Below are positions 11,801 to 33,800 of a stretch of DNA of 64,000 bases, piece by piece. Positions within the stretch are counted from its first letter, which is position 1, and every line of letters starts with the position of its first letter. A program made the position numbers and the translations under genes. The notes beneath the pieces were generated by a model. The model did not search any database, was not told where the DNA came from, and saw only the letters and a program-made list of their open reading frames with translations. This stretch comes from Phallusia mammillata (lineage: Eukaryota): NCBI GenBank assembly GCA_965637545.1, contig OZ281495.1, forward strand, positions 24,304,001 to 24,368,000, written 5' to 3'.

Positions 11801-14345
11801 CCACCTGGTGCCTGGTCGCAATGGAGTGAATGTACAGAAAGCTGCGAAGGAGGTGTTCAAACCAGGACGAGACTTTGCGCCAACCAATTTGGCTGCAACG
11901 GAGCTCTACACAATACGCGCGCTTGCAACCAACGTCCCTGTGAAGGTCAGTGGAAACAAAGACTAGGACTTAAGCTATAATACAATAGCAATATATTTCA
12001 GTCCGATTAGGCATGTCCCAAAGATACTTCCGAATGGTACTACATATACTAGAGATAATAAAGTTAAGCTCGGTAATGTAATCTTGATTTGAACGAAGTA
12101 TTTTCCTTAAATACTCGTACATCTGTTCGTACTATAATTCTCACCTAAGAAAAGTTAATTTTGCATTGTTTTAGACTAACGCGGCTGTTTGTATGTTGTA
12201 TTATATAAAAAATAGGATAAAGTTTGGTTTTCTCTGCTTTAAATAGTTCTTCGTAAATCACAGGGTTTACCAACTGGAGCCCATGGTCTCAGTGCACAGA
12301 AATTTGCGGCGGTGGAGAGCATAGCAGAAGTCGTACTTGTCCCCCTGCCACCAACTGTCCACCAGATCAACACGGTACAAACACTGTACAGCTAGCAGTT
12401 TGCAACAGTCAAGTTTGCCCTGGGACATGGGCTTCGTGGACAGAATGGAGTGTTTGCAGTAAAACGTGTGGACCTGGCCAGCAAAAGCGAAGTCGACAAT
12501 GCAAAGGAGGTGTTGTGGGACAAGCCGGATGCACCGAACCGCCCGAAGAAACGCAAAACTGCCAAATTGAAGTTTGCCCTGGTTTCTGGGGGGACTGGGT
12601 TCCCGTCGGAAGTTGTTCGGCGTCCTGTGGGCCGGGTACGTCGTCCGAAAGAAGGACATGTATTGGCGGGGTGCCTGGAGGACCAGGGTGTCCCGGACTT
12701 GCCACCCGAGATGTCAATTGCAACTTGGGCGACTGTGTTGTGCAATGGTTGTCATGGAAACCATGGACTACTTGCTCCAAACAATGCGGTGGCGGCGACA
12801 GGACTCGCGTCAGGTAATTTTACGTTGTCCCTTATAATGTAGCTTGGAATGTTTCCATATTGACCTAGCTTTTTTAACGTAAACAGAACATGCGAACATG
12901 GGGCACCAGGCGATGTCGGGTGCGAGGGTTCTGCTGACGAAACCGAACGATGCAATGAGCAGAAGTGCGCGACAGGTACGGTTGCGAGCTTCAAGTCACC
13001 TATTTGTTTACAAAATGCGTTAACGCATATGGTTGTGTTCTTCAGGTCCCTGTGCCGGTACACGCGACTTGGTAGCATGTGGACATCTTGTGGGATATTG
13101 TACTGTGTTGATAGACTATATGCAAGCAAATTGCCAAGAGACATGCTGCAAAGCCAGATATAATATAGGTGAGATAATATAAATATACATTCAATACTGT
13201 GATGAGCCCTGGAGCGTTCATGTAGACTCCCAATTATGGCAAACTTATATGTGAATCATAGTACACCTAGTCATTTAATATACGAGACAGACAACGGTAC
13301 TTGTGATTTGACTTTCCGTAGGCTCGCCACCGAGCCTTTGGTAGAGCGCCAAAGCAGAGTTGCAAGTCGGGCCGAGCTTTTCGGGCCGGGTTCGGGCTTA
13401 GGTATTTGTGAGAAAACGGGCTTAAAACGGGCCTGACTTTACGTTCCGTGTCCGCCATTTTTTCAAATAAAATCACTCAGCTAAGTAACAAGTCTCTGGC
13501 GTTGACCTAATGCCCACCCTACTCTAAAACATATTGTTTACGCCATTGTCTACTATTGTTAATTGTGTTTGTTGTCTTTCTCTTTTTTCTTTCTCATACT
13601 TTGTTGCAAGACTTTCGTGGATAGACCTGTCAATTAAAATTTCGGGCCTAAACGGGCTTCTCAAAAACGTTTCGGGTTCGGGCCGGGCTTCGGGCTTATA
13701 CTTTCGGGTTCGGGCCGGGTTCGGACTCAGATTTTGGGCCCGCTTGCAACTCTGCGCCAAAGGCTTCTGTCATGGGTTCTAATTTAATGGTAGAGATACT
13801 AGGTCGTAAAGGGCACAGTTATTTAAATTACCAGAAAACTGGGGTAGGGTTACGAAACAACTAAGAAGTTTTTTTGATTGTTATATTATTATAAAACCTC
13901 ACCCCAACTCCAATAGCCATAACCTTCATCATTTTCACTCAATTTGCTTTCAAATATTCGCAAACGCTTTTAACGCATCAGTTCTATCAGAAATTAGCAA
14001 ACTTTGGGTGATCTTACCTTAGTAGATTTTCCTAATTCCACCGCAGGCTATATTTTTCTAACCTATGCCTTGACATGTGGAAATGCTTGGGACACTGTCA
14101 TCATTCGGTTGAACGCCTTCAATAGGCCTGTTGTACTATAATAATGTATATAGGAGTGACATACATTTCCTCACTAGTTTTGACATTACATAAGAATTTA
14201 CTTTGTGTTTGCAGGAGTCGGTCAGCCGCCGTGCCAGGATGACCCAGCACAAGCGGCGAACTGCTTCAACTTTGCCAGTTTTTGCCACACTGGTCAAATG
14301 CGGTGGATGGTCACGAGCTGTCGAAAAACATGCCGCTTTTGCTAG
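2858..14345 (+). CDS. Secreted modular trypsin-like serine protease 1: SP-ShKT-EGF-cbEGF-S1 protease-~15 TSP1-ShKT-~5 TSP1-2 ShKT (multi-exon)
   Basis: Phase-consistent GT-AG exons: 2858-2880 (MATILDK), 2951-3015 (signal peptide [13 protein letters not shown]), 3234-3359 (6-Cys ShKT), 3923-4202 (EGF, DINEC EGF), 4566-4651 (DR-IVGG...WPWQ), 5050-5135 (TAGHC), 5699-5869 (NDVAL), 6053-6212 (GKDACQ), 6453-6650 (GDSGG). Then ~20 WxxWxxC..TCGGG..R.R.C TSP1 repeats (7011-12975). Last exon 14215-14345 is an ShKT ending [11 protein letters not shown]. Confidence 0.9.
3716..3875. mobile_element. hAT-type MITE (family A)
   Basis: TIR CAACGGTGGGATTC / GAATTCCACCACTG; 8-bp TSD GATGTACA/GATATACA; reverse-complement homolog at 6736-6916. 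Confidence 0.8.
6736..6916. mobile_element. hAT-type MITE (family A)
   Basis: TIR CAGTGGTGGGATTCA / TGAAGCCCGCCATTG; TSD CCTTAAAC/CCTAAAAC. Confidence 0.8.
13201..14160 (+). mobile_element. Older, diverged copy of the tRNA-containing Penelope-like non-autonomous element, with an inverted 5' segment and two nested insertions
   Basis: 13201-13278 is the reverse complement of the 19431-19540 repeat. 13280-13354, 13763-13784 and 14032-14160 align forward to ~19590-19825. Confidence 0.8.
13355..13754. mobile_element. hAT-type MITE (family B, CGGGCC/CGGGTT-rich subtermini)
   Basis: TIR CAGAGTTGCAAG / CTTGCAACTCTG; perfect 8-bp TSD CGCCAAAG; inserted in the tRNA-like part of the host element. Confidence 0.9.
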
Positions 14346-18404: not shown

Positions 18405-21400
18405 ATGGCGAAGACAAGCCAGCAAATTGTATTGTAAGTATCCAGTTTTAGATTTTGTTTTGCCATGGTGATTCATACATTCAAGCTAAAGCTGCCAGAA
18501 ATTTTAGGGCGTGATAACAGAGATGTTGTTTTTTTGTTTAGATTTTCTATTCTGCTTTTGGGCTTCGTTTCCCAGCGTGCAAGCGGCCAATGTACGGGTG
18601 GTAAGTTTCATTTTTGAATTTTATTTGGCAACAGTTATCTGAACATTTATTAAATGTTAAGACAGTCGACTATTGTTCATCAATCGTACTTATCTTGTAA
18701 TTTTTACCTGCAGGCGGATTGGGATGTAAAGATTGCTATACGTGGTGCAAAGATTACAAACATCTTTGCGACCAATCAATTGTTGGAAAATATTGTTCTA
18801 AGACCTGCGGCACAGCCACCTCGTGTGGAATAGATGGTAAGTGATCAAATGTCATCTAATTAGTACGTTCAACAAAAACGAAAATTCACGAAGCTTAAAA
18901 GATTTTGGGATCTTGTGGGCATGCATCATGCATAAAGCAACAAAACAAAAGGGTTGTGTATGTTGTAGCACAAATGAGCATTTGAACTAAAGGCACCGGT
19001 TCTGCATATAGACTAAACTATGTTTTCAGCATGCGCAAACTGTGAACACAAATGTGTGGTCGACTCAGCTGCAAACACAGCCAAATGCGGTTGCTTTAAC
19101 GGCTATACTCTCGCAAGTGACGGTCATTCTTGCGAAGGTGAGTTACATGACAAATATTACCATTTTCAAAGTTGAAACGTCAAGTAAGCTCAAAGTTCGT
19201 TATGTTCAGATATCAATGAATGCTTGATACCCGACATCTGCAAAAATGTGGAAGGCCAACCAATCAAAAATTGCCTCAATACGAACGGCTCATACAACTG
19301 TCATGCCTGCTCAGGAAGCGATATGAGGGGTTTTTACAAACAGGAGGGTTGTTGTAAAATTACAGGAAGTAAGTGTGATTTCCGTAAATATTTTGCTGTT
19401 TCATATTTCATATGATATGAAGGCGCTATACTTCAATGGGCCTGGCGTACTGTGATTTACATATGAGTGTGCCGTGATCGCTGGTCTGCATAGACGCTTC
19501 AGGGCTGATCCCAGTTATGAATTTATGTTCATCTTAACTGATACTGGTCAATCTGGCGATCCCCTACTACGAAGCTGACATGTGCAGCATACGAGGCAGG
19601 CAACGGTGCTTGTGATTCGACTTTCGGCGGATTCTCCACTGGGCCTGTGTAGCTCAGTTGGTAGAGCGCGAGTCCCGGAAAGACTCCTGTCGTGGGTTCG
19701 AATCCCACCGCAGGCTAGATTTTTCTAGCCTACGCCTTGCCATATGGTGGTGAATGCTTGGTGACCGGCTGATTCGGTATAGCGCCTTCAATGGGCCTGG
19801 CGTACTGTGATTTACATATGAGTGTGCCGTGATCGCTGGTCTGCATAGACGCTTCAGGGCTGATCCCAGTTATGAATTTATGTTCATCTTAACTGGAATC
19901 CATTTATTTTTAATTGATCCTCCATTTGTTTGATTCCTACAACAAATTTTTGTTTGTTTTTTTAAATTTATCAAATGGAAGAAATGCAAAATGCCTGAAT
20001 TTTTTTTCTCCCTCAAATGGTTTTGTACAGAAAATCAACACTATTTAGAACTTGTTGGTTTCAGTTGCATCCCAATAGGTACAGTAAAAATACCTAAACA
20101 GCTATAATATTAGCATTCTAAATTCTAGACTTTGAAAGCTGCGGACAGAGTTCAACGACCGGCCGAATTGTAGGTGGAGAAAACACAGACATTGAAAAAT
20201 GGCCTTGGCAGGTAATGTTCTTACCTACTTTACTCTGTTCAAAATTGTTCTCTAACTTGAAATCGACAACTTGACCTACGTAAATAATTAAACATTGTTA
20301 TGAAGTACACGGTTTTGAATAATCTGAGCAAAAAAATCAGAGCCAATATATTGGTGTAGAACAGGGGTTCTTAACCAGGGGTACATGTACCCCTTGGGGG
20401 TACGAAGCACCAAAGTAGGGGGTACGACAGTCAGTGTGAAATTATGCATTATTTAGGCATATTTGTGAAGAATGCGTAACAAGTTACTTTGTTATGTGTA
20501 GTTGATTTCTGTAAATTTTGTTGAACTTACAAGACTATTTTAATGCATGCATTCAACACGTAAGTTATAAATACACTGAGTTTAATTCCCATTATTGTTT
20601 ACTTCCGTTGGCCATTGTAGACAGGGGGTACGAGAAAATGTCATGAAAGCTCAAGGGGTACAAGCGCTAAAAAGGTTAAGAAACACTGGTGTAGAACATA
20701 ACGACGTTTCGACAAGTGCTATATTGTCATCATCAGGTTATAAGAAAGTTTTATAACTTGTTGATGTCTTATAACCTGATGATGACAATAGCACTTATCG
20801 AAACGTCGTTATGTTCTAAACAAATATACTGGCTCTGATTTTTTTTGCTTACATTGGTATTATAATACCTATATTATAAATGCTTATAAGGTCGAACGTT
20901 TTCAGAAATACATTGTCAGCAACAGCCGTTTTGTGTGCGATTTTTATCAGGGTTTTATGTTTAGGTATACGTTGTGATCAGAAGCCAAGTTTGCGGTGGA
21001 AGCATCATCAACAAAGATTGGATCGTAACTGCCGGTCATTGTGTCGTGTGAGTAAACATTGTTGTGTTGTTGGCCATTTCTGCCAAGTCCATGATTGTAA
21101 GCAATCTTAAATTAAGGAAATCTTATTAAATAACACTACACGTTTCTGGCTTGGAAGGGACCTTGTTTTTGGTGCGAAGTAGTTGAAATTTGTGATGAGT
21201 ATCAGTCATGTTATTCGTTTTTAAAGAGCGCTATGCTATATTTGTATTCAACTTGATAGTCAAATTAAATAATAAAAGGCCCATTTTCGATTTTTAGCGA
21301 CATCGGACAGCAAGATTATCACCTACTGACTGTCGTCGCAGGAGTTACCGAAACTGTCAATCAAACCAGCGTTCACCACCAAACCTGCGATGTTGCTGAG

Positions 21401-30826: not shown

Positions 30827-33800
30827 ATGACACATACAAGTCAACAAAATGTATTGTAAGTATCTATGTAACTTTGTGGCGGCCATTCATATGTTAAACC
30901 TCTTGAAACATTATAGGCATGATTGCAGAGATGTTGTTTTATTTTAATTTAGAGTTTTCTTTCTGCTTTTGGGCTTCGTTTTCCTGCATGCAAGTGGCCA
31001 ATGCCTGCCCGGTAAGTTTCATTTCTCAACACCAACCTGGATATTTGATGATTTGAAAATCGTAAAAAAACCAAAGGCTCTTGTTAAGCATTCCCACTTT
31101 TCATGTATTTTTATAGCCAGTGCATTGCCACATGTGGGGCTTGGTGACGGTCTGGCTCTGCACAACGCCTTCAATAGATCTGACATACTATGATTTGTAT
31201 ATGAGTGTGTCGTGATCGCTGGTCTGCACATGCCCTTCAGGACTGATCCCAGCACTAATTTATTGTTTATGTAACTGATTTCATGTGATGCTTATCTGCA
31301 GGAGAACTGGGATGCAAAGATTGTTATACGTGGTGCAAAGATTACAAATATCTTTGCGACCAAGCGATTGTTGGAAAACATTGTCCTGAGACATGTGGCA
31401 CAGCCAAATCCTGTAGACTCGCCGGTAAGTGGTAAAATTCACGTAATAAGTTAAATAACAAAAAACTGTATATTTCTCTCCGTGAAGAGCTGTTGGTGTA
31501 CAAGGAAATTCAAAATATTTTTTTCCCATTTTTAGGGAAAACTTTGCGGCATAAACGGTAAGGTTTTTTTATGTATGATTTATGCGTTTTCAGAGTGCGC
31601 AAACTGTGAGCAAAAATGTACGGTCAATCCAACTACAAACACTGCCAAATGCGATTGCTTCGAAGGCTATTCTCTCGCAAGTGACGGCCAAACGTGCAAT
31701 GGTGGGTTACATGACGAACATCACCAGTTATAAAATAATGTTATTCAGAATTAATTTCAATTTTTCAAAAATATTTATGTTGAGATATCGATGAATGTTT
31801 GATACCCGGCATCTGCAAAAACGTGGAAGGTAAACCTTTTAAAATATGCCACAATTTCAACGGTTCATACACCTGTTATGCTTGCTGGGAAACAAATATG
31901 AGAAGTTATTACAAGAAAGACGGTTGCTGCAAACTTACAGAAGGTAAGATGAATTCCTCTCAATAATTTCGCTGTTTTATTTGCTTGTGCATACAAGTTA
32001 TGTCATATATTTGTGCGATTTCCTTTTTACTATTTTTTACTGATGGTAGTAATCGAAAATGCCTACAAGAGTGTTCTAACAAAAACCGTTAGGTGGAATA
32101 ACAATTTTGCATAGAACCAGATTCCCTAAGCTGTGGAAGGCCTTCAATACCTCCGAGAGGAGATTACACAAAAATTGGAAAATGGCCTTGGCAGGTAACA
32201 GTAACGTATTTCATGTTTTTAAAACCGATTACAGGCCTGCACAAAGCATATTTTTACAAAAAGCATGGTATATACATGATTGTTATTAAACTATTCGTGT
32301 GAGCAACAGCCATTTTGTTTGCAATGTAAATCAGGCTTTAATATCCCATAGGTGTACGTTGTGGTCAAAAGCCAGGTTTGTGGCGGAAGCATTATCAACG
32401 AAAACTGGATCGTGACTGCTGGTCACTGTGTCGTGTGAGTAAACATTGTTTTGTTGGTACTATTTCTGCACGGTTTAATGTTGTAATAAAAAATAAAGTC
32501 CAATTTGAAATGAAATCAGCCCTACCGTAACAGTTTTCCGGTGATAACTGTTATCTACAGCAATATGATTCAAAACCCAGTGTATAAAACCCTAGGCCAA
32601 ACAGTTGCACTGTACAGCTTGTTTTACCATTTTATCGCTTTTATAACAGTGTTATATTCTCTCACAGGAACCGAAAATGCCAAAAACATTTGGTGAAATA
32701 TAAGCTTATTTTCTGTGAAAATACTTTGTACAGAACGGTTAATTCTGTTTGGCCTAGGTTTTTATACATTTGGTTTTGGATGATGTTGAAACTAAGCAAC
32801 GCTTACTTTTCAGCAAAATTAACTGAAATAAAAAAATTTGACAAAGGGAACTTTTTCGACTCAATGTTCCCAAAAATAAATAATTCGTACAAATAGGGTG
32901 TAGTAGGCTATTCGTCTGCTACCATATTTTAAAAGGCGCTACGCTATTCGTACACAACTTTGTTTTAAACTTCAGTGGCATCGGACAGCAAGACTACCGC
33001 CTATTGACTGTCGTCGCTGGAGTTGGTGAAACTGCCGATCGAACAAGTATTCACCAGCAAACCCGCGATATTGCTGAGGTAATTGTATTTACGCGAACAT
33101 GTTTACCAATATAACTTATTTGGGAGCGAAACAGTTTTTGTAAGTCACACGCCGTTGGCACAATCCTTTATATCAGTGATTCTCAACCTGCATGTGGTAT
33201 GCGTGCGACGGAGCTTTTCAGGTGGTGCGGGAGCCGCTTTCTGCTATACCTAAATCAAGTTAGACCATAAAATGTAACTGAACTAATCCAACTAATCAGT
33301 CCTGGTTTTGGGTAAAACTCGGGTCTTGGACTATCTTTTGGAACTGTTAACTTTGCTGACTTTTAAAATAGGCTGTCCTAGTCAAGAAGAATATGCCTAC
33401 ATATTTTGATCTACCCTTTCAACAGGATTTGGGGGTTACGCAGCTACAAAAAATGCGTCAGGTGGTACGCGATTAGATATGTGTAGCCTACAGCTTTATG
33501 GTTAGGATGGGGGTGGCCTAGGATGGGCCAAGAAAAGCAATCTTGATAAGTTTGAATTACCGTTGTGTTTCAAATATGCAATTAATAGATACTGATCAGC
33601 ATTATCAATTTTTTTGATAAAAATGCAAAAGTGCTTCTAAGAGATGAAGCGTTTCTGGTCGGTGATTACTAGAAAATTACCGACTTTGTTTTGTTTCAAA
33701 AGATTATCCTCCATCCCTCTTACACGAATCAGACGAACGACATAGCCCTCATCCGAGTGTCACGGCGTTTTTACTCCGGCACCTTTGTAAAACCAATCTG

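What the first reader, a model, noticed from the sequence alone, without database searches (positions are those of the whole stretch)
19418..19895. Non-autonomous Penelope-like element with an internal tRNA module and no hammerhead
Seen: 1.3 tandem units of a 355-bp sequence (110-bp perfect direct repeats), a 14-bp inverted 5' tip, no ORF, no polyA tail, no TG..CA LTR ends and no obvious TSD. Two other copies show a 5' inversion (13201) or a 5' truncation with the same 3' end (31105). The repeat is highly structured (GGCGTACT/AGTGTGCC, GTCT/AGAC and CAGTTA/TAACTG stems). Established: partial-tandem or inverted pLTRs are PLE signatures, and metazoan retrozymes are 150-400-nt tandem units processed by hammerheads; SINEs have the tRNA at the 5' end. 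Here the cloverleaf is in the middle and I find no CUGANGA..GAAA core on either strand. Inference: a possibly undescribed PLE parasite whose multimeric RNA is cut to unit length by host RNase P/RNase Z at the cloverleaf (as with MALAT1 mascRNA), or by an unrecognised ribozyme in the structured repeat.
Basis: partly seen in the sequence, partly recalled or inferred. Interest (0 to 1): 0.85.

Follow-up and report, generated by a model that had tools for sequence, protein, structure and literature searches.

The report
Penelope-type retroposon carrying a tRNA-like gene
This is one copy of a young, abundant, non-coding jumping element of a sea-squirt genome that carries a tRNA-like gene instead of the usual hammerhead ribozyme and whose insertion scars match the peculiar way Penelope-like retrotransposons copy RNA into DNA, so it is a new variant of a known kind, not a new class.

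Summary
Window 19431-19785 is a 355-bp unit. 19786-19895 repeats its first 110 bp perfectly, and 19418-19431 is a 14-bp inverted tip. A tRNA-like gene followed by TTTTT lies inside. There is no ORF of 60 aa or more, no poly(A) and no hammerhead core.

The unit belongs to a family with at least 600-900 young pieces genome-wide. I dissected 41 independent insertions:
- 18 have clean 7-13-bp target-site duplications.
- 27 are two-armed, head to head.
- Direct arms reach more than 4 tandem units.
- 62 of 68 outer ends fall at two sites: A (unit 22-36, in a hairpin loop) and B (unit 103-121).
- Two-armed copies pair one A end with one B end in 19 of 27 cases.

This matches the published Penelope-like element (PLE) footprint: internal initiation of reverse transcription at two nearby RNA sites, extension of both DNA strands, and a "tail" at one end.

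His specific mechanism, RNase P/Z cutting at the cloverleaf, is not. Copy ends do not cluster at the tRNA borders, and most arms run straight through the tRNA. No autonomous partner sharing a tail was found. All 26 sampled PLE copies carry hammerheads.

This scan had already noted the same family elsewhere in this genome (s1-355927, s1-375405).

The parts
19418..19431 (-). 14-nt inverted 5' tip: a miniature inverted arm covering unit 347-355 plus 1-5. Its outer end is at unit 5, which is atypical for the family.
   Evidence: I2, 100% complementary to 19777-19790
19431..19785 (+). One complete 355-bp unit, used as the coordinate reference (unit 1 = 19431).
19786..19895 (+). Partial second unit (unit 1-110). 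The copy stops at preferred 3' site B.
19444..19473 (+). Hairpin A (GGCGTACT ... AGTGTGCC, unit 14-43). Its 14-nt loop holds preferred end site A (unit about 24-30 = 19454-19460). The hairpin is repeated at 19799-19828.
   Evidence: 30 of 68 outer ends lie at unit 22-36. Pairing is kept, with a compensatory change, in the diverged copy at 31182-31211.
19533..19551 (+). Preferred end site B (unit 103-121, ...CATCTTAACTGATAC...). The second copy of this site, from 19888, is where this insertion ends.
   Evidence: 32 of 68 outer ends. Genome 24-mer counts fall from 844 (unit 80-103) to 308 (unit 120-143).
19642..19717 (+). tRNA-like gene (unit 212-287). It has consensus-like A box (TAGCTCAGTTGG) and B box (GGTTCGAATCC), a 7-nt anticodon loop CCGGAAA with C in place of U33, and one extra base before the anticodon stem.
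   Evidence: ARAGORN; RF00005, 55.3 bits, alignment shown
19709..19734 (+). Hairpin in which the 3' acceptor strand pairs with downstream sequence. Its loop is the TTTTT run (19720-19724), a Pol III terminator-like signal 3 nt after the tRNA.
   Evidence: I6. T5 is retained in diverged copies at window 14034-14060 and 31107-31118. The 24-mer across it occurs 610 times.
13172..14150 (+). Older two-armed relative, about 75% identical. The inverted arm at 13172-13267 is unit 109 to 14, with its outer end at site B. The direct arm runs from 13280 to about unit 39. It is interrupted by a 400-bp TIR element (13355-13754) and other inserted DNA.
31107..31278 (+). 5'-truncated relative, 77% identical, unit 289 to 111, ending at site B. 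It is flanked by the 8-bp TSD TTTCATGT (31099-31106 and 31279-31286).

Best explanation
The locus is one insertion of a young, high-copy, non-coding retroposon family. It was most likely copied in trans by the reverse transcriptase/GIY-YIG endonuclease of a Penelope-like element (PLE).

Inferred pathway:
1. RNAs containing one or more 355-nt units are made, probably by read-through of genomic arrays or of host genes. This copy lies in sense orientation in an intron.
2. The PLE protein cuts both strands of the target with a 7-13-bp stagger.
3. It starts reverse transcription inside the RNA, not at its 3' end, at either of two sites about 81 nt apart. Site A is in the loop of hairpin unit 14-43. 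Site B is at ...CATCTTAACTG, unit about 105-110. Neither start needs homology to the target.
4. Each DNA end can be extended, usually one from A and one from B. This gives head-to-head arms with an 81-nt 'tail' on one side only.
5. Synthesis runs 5'-ward through unprocessed multimeric RNA and stops at variable points. That produces 5' truncations and partial tandems such as the 1.3-mer seen here.

The internal tRNA-like gene is a captured Pol III unit with its own A box, B box and T5 terminator. It sits where PLEs and retrozymes carry their hammerhead, about 95 nt upstream of the first initiation site. Its role is not shown. The T5 directly behind it, and arms that cross its start, argue that it does not drive SINE-style Pol III transcription of the template.

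Shown here: family membership, TSDs, arm architecture, the two end sites, A-B pairing, absence of a hammerhead, and abundant intact PLEs in the genome. Inferred: the identity of the enzyme, internal initiation, and the source of the RNA.
For: Family size and age:
- 91 matches at 84-100% identity to the window copy (mostly 93-100%).
- 24-mers occur 308-912 times against 0 for controls.

Dissection of 41 independent insertions:
- 18 have exact TSDs of 7-13 bp at the boundaries.
- 27 are two-armed, head to head.
- Direct arms run up to 4.0 units, with variable 5' starts.

The two end sites:
- 62 of 68 outer ends fall in two windows that cover 9.6% of the unit (P = 4e-56).
- A-B pairing occurs in 19 of 27 two-armed copies (permutation p = 3e-4).
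- Genome-wide 24-mer coverage rises 308 > 396 > 610 > 904 towards site A and collapses from 844 to 308 across site B.
- No microhomology is visible at the 3' junctions.

Published PLE behaviour:
[quoted passage not shown] Both strands are cut and extended. Unprocessed multi-copy RNA is the substrate. The sequence between the two start sites is the optional 'tail' (PMC11167929).
- An inverted 5'-truncated copy, and a tail often at one end only, are typical of PLEs (PMC8557442).

PLEs in this genome:
- 878 first-look PLE candidates, many with intact ORFs of 700-1000 aa.
- A genuine PLE at L039 shows the same head-to-head architecture.
Against: - No autonomous element shares a tail with the unit. 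There is no blastn similarity in 21 PLE 3' regions or in 6 whole PLE loci, apart from independent unit insertions.
- All 26 PLE copies in which a hammerhead was sought have a core downstream of the ORF. The unit has none.
- The A-B spacing is 81 nt, against the published 30-40-nt tail.
- In vitro, PAc showed no strand preference between its two start sites (PMC11167929), whereas here A and B pair up.
- There is no RNA end data. Only assembled contigs were available.
- This particular copy has no TSD, and its inverted tip ends at unit 5, at neither A nor B.
- 5' ends are enriched at unit 1-36, and two copies are exactly one unit long (28 to 27, 27 to 26). The simple model explains this only by adding a roadblock or template-switch step.
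Confidence: 0.75

Rival explanations
1. Multimeric transcripts are cut by host RNase P and/or RNase Z at the tRNA-like cloverleaf. The cloverleaf would then functionally replace the hammerhead, giving unit-length or circular RNAs that serve as the propagating form.
For: - The tRNA-like module is a good cloverleaf (55.3 bits).
- It sits about 95 nt upstream of initiation site A. PLE hammerheads lie a comparable distance upstream of the PLE 3' end or start site: about 63 nt at L039 and about 90 nt in PAc.
- A few 5'-type ends lie near its borders: 213 twice, 208, 211, 287, 291, 293, and 289 in the copy at window 31107.
- Exactly one-unit copies exist (L073, L076).
- In PLEs, hammerhead cleavage also leaves no trace in inserted copies. 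Missing breakpoints are therefore weak evidence against a processing role.
Against: - The borders are not significantly enriched among 64 5'-type ends (p 0.14 and 0.18).
- No 3' end lies at a tRNA border.
- Most arms carry the tRNA uninterrupted, and no copy lacks exactly the tRNA.
- No transcript contig joins 19641 to 19718.
- RNase P/Z products carry 5'-phosphate and 3'-OH ends. These are not the substrates of the RtcB ligase that circularises retrozyme RNA (established biochemistry, with PMC7229834).
- The one-unit copies break at site A, not at the tRNA.
Confidence: 0.12
2. An unrecognised self-cleaving or protein-assisted RNA motif at hairpin A cuts multimers at unit 26/27. This gives 355-nt monomers, linear or circular, so that A is both a 3' and a 5' RNA end.
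For: - 5'-type ends are enriched at unit 27-36 (6 against 1.8 expected, p 0.009).
- Copies L073 (28 to 27) and L076 (27 to 26) are exactly one unit long.
- Hairpin A keeps its pairing through a compensatory change.
- Only 17 of 69 exact unit 1-24 words on contig 1 continue into unit 37-60.
Against: - No Rfam ribozyme family matches at E up to 10.
- The fold is not more stable than shuffled sequence.
- Internal initiation in a stem-loop is already documented for a PLE and explains the 3' ends without any cleavage.
- Site B has no matching 5'-end hotspot.
- The 5' excess at 27-36 can come from a reverse transcriptase stopping at a protein or primer bound at the upstream A site. L078 shows this pattern: its inverted arm ends at 29 and its direct arm starts at 30.
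Confidence: 0.06
3. An ordinary tRNA-derived SINE, transcribed by Pol III from the tRNA promoter and mobilised by a LINE. Twin priming would explain the inversions.
For: - The A and B boxes are intact.
- TSDs and 5' truncation are also LINE features.
- L1-type twin priming produces 5' inversions (established knowledge).
Against: - The tRNA is internal. 5' ends do not cluster at it.
- TTTTT lies 3 nt behind the tRNA.
- Arms run through the tRNA start and through several units.
- There is no poly(A) or microsatellite tail.
- There are two alternative 3' ends 81 nt apart, and 27 of 41 copies are two-armed with A-B pairing.
Confidence: 0.04
4. A miniature LTR element (TRIM) of the Helenus/TRIMp3 kind, with the 110-bp repeats acting as LTRs.
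For: Direct repeats flank an internal part in this copy. Helenus elements carry tRNA-like sequences (PMC10886601).
Against: - The repeat length is set only by where each copy starts and stops. Other copies have 0.2 to 4 units.
- The tRNA lies outside the repeat.
- There are no TG..CA ends and no PBS/PPT architecture.
- TSDs are 7-13 bp and variable, not 4-5 bp.
Confidence: 0.01

Closest known systems
Penelope-like elements, in particular the biochemically studied Poseidon element PAc of Anolis (PMC11167929), and the general PLE insertion anatomy (PMC8557442)
   Same: - Partial tandems (pseudo-LTRs).
- An adjacent inverted 5'-truncated arm.
- Two alternative 3' ends, with the extra 'tail' usually on one side only.
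- Initiation in a stem-loop, without homology to the target.
- Variable TSDs.
- No poly(A).
   Different: - No RT/GIY-YIG ORF.
- No hammerhead.
- The tail is 81 nt rather than 30-40 nt.
- It carries a tRNA-like Pol III gene.
- No sequence similarity to any of the 27 PLE loci sampled.
Metazoan non-LTR retrozymes (PMC7229834; bioRxiv 10.64898/2026.07.22.740005)
   Same: - Non-coding units of 150-400 nt in tandem.
- Dispersed, with long and variable TSDs.
- Thought to depend on PLEs.
- Hammerhead retrozyme families coexist in this genome (scan notes; hammerhead cores at window 20736 and 55434).
   Different: - The defining type I hammerhead is absent.
- A tRNA-like gene sits in the corresponding position.
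- No evidence of circular RNA (contigs only).
Non-autonomous Chlamys elements such as MRC1 of Chlamydomonas, and the hammerhead-less Naiad PLEs (PMC8557442)
   Same: They show that PLE-type mobility does not need a canonical hammerhead. They also show that non-coding derivatives form pLTRs and multicopy head-to-tail insertions.
   Different: Those derivatives share 3' ends with autonomous families, and no such partner was found here. No tRNA module is reported in them.
TRIMp3 elements: Helenus (tRNA-like in LTRs), Cassandra and Ajax (5S-like) (PMC10886601)
   Same: A small-RNA gene with Pol III promoter features is carried inside a non-autonomous retroelement that is not a SINE.
   Different: Those are LTR elements with PBS/PPT, 4-5-bp TSDs and integrase-type insertion. 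This element is target-primed and PLE-like.
tRNA-derived SINEs
   Same: A tRNA-related module with A and B boxes; short, non-coding and high in copy number.
   Different: - The module is internal, not a 5' head.
- It is followed at once by T5.
- There is no LINE-type tail.
- Copies are multimeric and two-armed.
MALAT1/mascRNA-type tRNA-like processing signals (from general knowledge, not tested here)
   Same: A cloverleaf embedded in a longer transcript could recruit RNase P/Z.
   Different: Nothing here shows processing. The copy ends do not map to the cloverleaf.

Membership tests
PLE-dependent (non-autonomous Penelope-like) retroelement | Partial or full head-to-tail tandems (pseudo-LTR structure) | tested here: met
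   The window copy is 1.3 units. Other copies have up to 4.0 units in one arm.
PLE-dependent (non-autonomous Penelope-like) retroelement | An inverted 5'-truncated copy adjacent to the direct copy | tested here: met
   27 of 41 insertions are two-armed. The same architecture is seen in a genuine PLE at L039.
PLE-dependent (non-autonomous Penelope-like) retroelement | Two alternative 3' ends or an optional 'tail', usually at one end only; initiation not homologous to the target | tested here: met
   62 of 68 ends are at site A or B. A-B pairing occurs in 19 of 27 two-armed copies. No junction microhomology is visible. The spacing is 81 nt rather than 30-40 nt.
PLE-dependent (non-autonomous Penelope-like) retroelement | Target-site duplications of variable length | tested here: met
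   18 of 41 have exact TSDs of 7-13 bp. The window copy itself has none.
PLE-dependent (non-autonomous Penelope-like) retroelement | Sequence shared with an autonomous PLE (3' region or pLTR) | tested here: inconclusive
   No similarity was found to 21 PLE 3' regions or to 6 whole PLE loci. Only a sample of the 878 candidates could be fetched.
PLE-dependent (non-autonomous Penelope-like) retroelement | Hammerhead ribozyme in the pLTR (canonical PLE clades) | tested here: not met
   No core with up to 1 mismatch on either strand, while the control was found. All 26 PLE copies checked have one. Naiad PLEs also lack it (PMC8557442), so this feature is not universal.
Metazoan non-LTR retrozyme | A type I hammerhead in each tandem unit | tested here: not met
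   The Rfam negative is uninformative, because Rfam misses the control.
Metazoan non-LTR retrozyme | Unit-length circular RNA | not testable with these tools
   Only assembled contigs were available, with no read ends.
tRNA-derived SINE | A tRNA-related head at the 5' end, from which Pol III transcribes the whole element | tested here: not met
   The tRNA is at unit 212-287 and is followed by T5. 5' ends at 203-213 number 4 against 2.0 expected. Arms cross the tRNA start.
tRNA-derived SINE | A LINE-derived or A-rich/microsatellite 3' tail | tested here: not met
   The ends are ...CATCTTAACTG or ...GTACTGTGAT, with no A-run.
TRIM / Helenus (LTR type) | Fixed LTRs, PBS and PPT, 4-5-bp TSD | tested here: not met
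   The unit number varies and TSDs are 7-13 bp. The tRNA lies outside the repeated part.
tRNA gene (Rfam RF00005) | A cloverleaf scoring above the gathering threshold, with A and B boxes and a downstream T-run | tested here: met
   55.3 bits against 29. T5 lies at 19720-19724.
tRNA gene (Rfam RF00005) | A canonical anticodon loop (U33) and an isotype-consistent shape | tested here: not met
   The loop is CCGGAAA, with C33. ARAGORN's 'Ser(GGA)' label conflicts with the short variable arm. It is therefore tRNA-like, and probably not a decoding tRNA.

The most novel reading that the evidence does not exclude
The tRNA-like gene is a functional substitute for the hammerhead of PLEs and retrozymes. 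Host RNase P/RNase Z, rather than a ribozyme, would process multimeric element RNA, or Pol III/TFIIIC would keep the copies active. That would make this a retrozyme-like lineage that has outsourced RNA cleavage to the tRNA-maturation machinery. A second, milder novelty is that the strict pairing of one A end with one B end looks like the in vivo footprint of a dimeric PLE complex that uses one initiation site per DNA strand.
Probability: 0.13. Interest if true: 0.8.

Novelty: new variant of a known kind. Interest (0 to 1): 0.5.

Why it matters
The role of the hammerhead in Penelope-like elements and animal retrozymes is unresolved. In vitro it is dispensable for insertion (PMC11167929). Here a highly successful family shows the full PLE insertion footprint but carries a tRNA-like Pol III gene where the hammerhead normally sits. 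That gives a natural comparison for asking what this module does: RNA processing, transcription, or chromatin access.

The family also gives in vivo support, from dozens of TSD-flanked young insertions, for internal two-site initiation and for extension of both DNA strands by PLE enzymes. It adds one observation not reported in vitro: the two start sites are used in pairs, one per end.

On the practical side, such elements inflate tRNA gene predictions and produce palindromic structures prone to misassembly in tunicate genomes.

Tried and rejected
- Rfam scan of the locus at E up to 10: only the tRNA matched. I then found that Rfam also misses a genuine minimal PLE hammerhead. I therefore replaced it with a core-motif scan that has a positive control. 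My first version, with a helix-II filter, failed on the control and was dropped.
- Tandem Repeats Finder does not report the 1.3-mer.
- Partner search: GIY-YIG Pfam hits and a 705-aa PLE ORF were used to collect PLE loci and 21 downstream regions. None shares sequence with the unit. L043 and L053 only hold independent diverged unit copies. L042 only holds a 68%-identical tRNA-arm-like stretch.
- RNA evidence: the runs found are assembled contigs only. They show that the family is present in spliced-transcript assemblies on both strands, and that no contig skips the tRNA. They give no ends, strand or abundance.
- Thermodynamic structure: z-scores are not significant.
- Pol III/SINE model: rejected because T5 lies behind the tRNA and because arms longer than a Pol III unit cross the tRNA start.
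- 24-mer step at the tRNA 5' border (396 against 765). It looked at first like a 5'-end hotspot. The coordinates show it is largely due to variant families that share the tRNA module but lack unit about 190-210 (the L043 type), and to mismatches. It is not used as evidence.
The insertion sample therefore stayed at 41.
- Literature: no paper in the searched library describes a PLE-type element with a tRNA-like gene.
Full report
**1. What is at the locus**

- A 355-bp unit lies at 19431-19785.
- A perfect 110-bp repeat of its start lies at 19786-19895.
- A 14-nt tip at 19418-19431 is the exact reverse complement of 19777-19790.
- ARAGORN and Rfam (RF00005, 55.3 bits against a gathering score of 29) find a tRNA-like cloverleaf at 19642/3-19716/7.
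- The cloverleaf has consensus-like A and B boxes. Its anticodon loop, CCGGAAA, is non-canonical, with C at position 33.
- A TTTTT run lies 3 nt downstream. It forms the loop of a hairpin that re-uses the 3' acceptor strand (I6).
- The largest ORF is 59 aa.
- There is no poly(A), no TG..CA ends and, for this copy, no target-site duplication (TSD).
- A spliced transcript contig joins 19368 to 20131. The element therefore lies in sense orientation inside an intron of a gene whose flanking exons read (by eye) as EGF-like and trypsin-like.

**2. It is a family, not a local duplication**

The window is G000:C2:24304001-24368000 of a 240-Mb assembly with eight large contigs, which earlier scan notes call a sea squirt.
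- The 478-bp query gives 91 scored matches, mostly 93-100% identical, out of 5138 first-look candidates.
- Exact-or-one-mismatch 24-mers from the unit occur as follows, against 0 for reversed controls:

| Unit position | Count |
|---|---|
| 1-24 | 904 |
| 37-60 | 912 |
| 80-103 | 844 |
| 120-143 | 308 |
| 188-211 | 396 |
| 214-237 | 765 |
| 283-306 | 610 |

They are older relatives, 75-77% identical.
  - One is a two-armed copy at about 13172-14150 with nested insertions.
  - The other is a 5'-truncated copy at 31107-31278 with the 8-bp TSD TTTCATGT.

**3. Anatomy of 41 independent insertions**

I used 21 loci from the similarity search, which is biased towards long copies. I added 20 loci taken in chromosomal order from the 24-mer list, which is much less biased.
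- Eighteen have exact TSDs of 7-13 bp at the boundaries.
- Direct arms start at variable unit positions and contain up to 4.0 units.
- Twenty-seven insertions are two-armed, head to head. Both outer boundaries are then 3'-type ends.
- Of 68 outer ends, 30 lie at unit 22-36 (site A, mode 26) and 32 at unit 103-121 (site B, mode 106-109). Only 6 lie elsewhere. These two windows cover 9.6% of the unit (P = 4e-56).
- Site A lies in the 14-nt loop of the hairpin GGCGTACT...AGTGTGCC.
- Two-armed insertions combine one A end with one B end in 19 of 27 cases (permutation p = 3e-4).
- No microhomology between the element and the flank is visible at the junctions.
- The 24-mer profile gives the same picture genome-wide. 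Coverage rises towards A and collapses by 64% across B.
- On contig 1, only 17 of 69 exact unit 1-24 words continue into unit 37-60. The control interval gives 26 of 60 (p 0.04).

**4. Which machinery**

These features are not those of LINE/SINE, LTR/TRIM or DIRS insertion. They match what is published for Penelope-like elements (PLEs).
- Craig et al. describe partial tandems, an adjacent inverted 5'-truncated copy, and a short 'tail' often present at one end only (PMC8557442).
- Frangieh et al. worked with purified PAc protein (PMC11167929). They showed the following:
  - Both DNA strands are cut and extended.
  - The sequence between the two sites is the genomic 'tail'.
  - Unprocessed multi-copy RNA is the dominant substrate.
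  - The hammerhead is dispensable for insertion.
- The family here reproduces each point in vivo, with an 81-nt tail.
- The genome is rich in PLEs: 878 first-look candidates, many with intact ORFs of 700-1000 aa, including a tandem array on contig 8.
- A genuine PLE at L039 (RT plus GIY-YIG) shows the same head-to-head shape.
- I could not find the partner. None of 21 PLE 3' regions or 6 whole PLE loci shares sequence with the unit.

**5. Hammerhead**

- Rfam finds no ribozyme in the unit at E up to 10. It also misses the minimal hammerhead of the L039 PLE, so that negative is worthless.
- A core scan for CUGANGA, then 6-60 nt, then GAAA finds the control. It also finds a core downstream of the ORF in all 26 PLE copies examined, from two RT clades that are only 26% identical.
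- The same scan finds nothing in the circularly extended unit with up to one mismatch on either strand.
- The element is therefore not a retrozyme by definition, although it behaves like one.

**6.

If RNase P/Z cut the template at the cloverleaf, copy ends should pile up at unit 212/213 or 286/287. They do not.
- No 3' end lies there.
- Among 64 5'-type ends, unit 203-213 holds 4 against 2.0 expected (p 0.14). Unit 286-293 holds 3 against 1.4 expected (p 0.18).
- Most arms contain the tRNA intact.
- No genomic copy and no transcript contig lacks exactly the tRNA.

A SINE-style Pol III origin of the template is also unlikely.
- T5 follows the tRNA by 3 nt.
- Many A-primed arms are longer than the 177 nt that such a transcript could supply. 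They cross the tRNA start without a break.

What can be said positively:
- The A and B boxes and T5 are kept in the young family, where the 24-mer across T5 occurs 610 times.
- T5 persists in three of four diverged lineages.
- The tRNA 5' half (765 occurrences) is more widespread than the 24-mer just upstream (396). Variant families share the module but lack unit about 190-210.
- The module sits about 95 nt upstream of site A. This is comparable to the hammerhead-to-end distance in PLEs.

A role analogous to the hammerhead therefore remains possible. PLE hammerhead cleavage likewise leaves no trace in inserted copies. But nothing here demonstrates such a role.

**7. Loose ends**

- 5'-type ends are enriched at unit 1-36 (16 against 6.5 expected, p 5e-4), and specifically at 27-36 (6 against 1.8, p 0.009).
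- Two copies are exactly one unit long (28 to 27, 27 to 26). A third runs from 120 to 114.
- This could mean cleavage or circularity at site A. It could also be a reverse transcriptase halted by protein or primer bound at the next upstream A site. L078 has an inverted arm ending at 29 and a direct arm starting at 30. I favour the roadblock but cannot test it.
- The claim that the repeat is 'highly structured' is not borne out. Folding z-scores are -1.17 and -0.75.
- Only hairpin A keeps its pairing in a diverged copy, including a G-C to A-U double change.

**8. Novelty**

- The searched literature describes four related things:
  - hammerhead retrozymes as PLE derivatives (PMC7229834; bioRxiv 10.64898/2026.07.22.740005);
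  - non-autonomous Chlamys elements;
  - hammerhead-less Naiads (PMC8557442);
  - tRNA-like genes inside LTR-type TRIMs (PMC10886601).
- It does not describe a PLE-type element carrying a tRNA-like gene in place of the hammerhead.
- Other agents of this scan had already reached the PLE-style reading for this family on other DNA of the same genome (s1-355927, s1-375405). My tests agree with theirs. They add the two-site statistics, the A-B pairing, the link to internal initiation and the negative test of the tRNA borders.
- Verdict: a real feature and a new variant of a known kind. His specific processing mechanism is unsupported.

The window copy served as the reference throughout.

Noticed in passing
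L039:2318-7400 (G000:C4, about 7517300-7522400): A head-to-head pair of PLE copies, one with an intact 705-aa RT plus GIY-YIG ORF. It is inserted inside a tandem array of tRNA-Leu and tRNA-Met genes with a period of about 487 bp. Both arms end at the same 3' sequence, about 63 nt after a minimal hammerhead.
   Followed up: partly
G000:C8:5582776-5602118 (coordinates only): At least five PLE ORF copies with identical scores. Four lie in the same orientation at an exact 3300-bp spacing, with open frames of 942 aa. This is a tandem array of apparently intact PLEs.
   Followed up: no
window 20736 (- strand) and 55434 (+ strand): Hammerhead cores, CTGATGA...GAAA with a 3-5-bp helix II. The first lies in the next intron, inside the region another note of this scan (s1-554147) calls back-to-back minimal hammerheads. 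The second resembles cores seen near PLEs in L042 and L043.
   Followed up: no
window 13355-13754: A 400-bp element with terminal inverted repeats (CAGAGTTGCAAG...) and an 8-bp TSD, CGCCAAAG. It is nested inside the tRNA-like module of the old family copy and looks like a hAT-type MITE.
   Followed up: no
L039:7299-7332 and the window locus: Rfam 15 covariance models do not detect the minimal PLE-type hammerhead even at E = 10 on a 500-nt query. A blank Rfam result therefore says nothing about PLE hammerheads in this genome.
   Followed up: yes
genome-wide 24-mer counts; L043:7900-8250: The 5' half of the tRNA-like module occurs 765 times, while the 24-mer immediately upstream occurs 396 times. 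At least one variant family (the L043 type) has the module but lacks unit about 190-210, and has also lost the T arm. The tRNA module thus seems to be shared among several related families.
   Followed up: partly
window 19300-19368 and 20131 onward: A transcript contig (run X5) joins 19368 to 20131. The element is therefore intronic, in sense orientation, in a gene whose exons read (by eye) as EGF-like and trypsin-like (IVGGENT...).
   Followed up: partly
Read laying loose ends at window 19687: In three of the four runs laid (X1, X8, X13), contigs carry the element's T-arm sequence preceded by a different D/anticodon region (...GGTAGAGCGCCTGCCCCGGG...). This is another tRNA or tRNA-like family with the same 3' half, and may be a clue to the source tRNA.
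   Followed up: no
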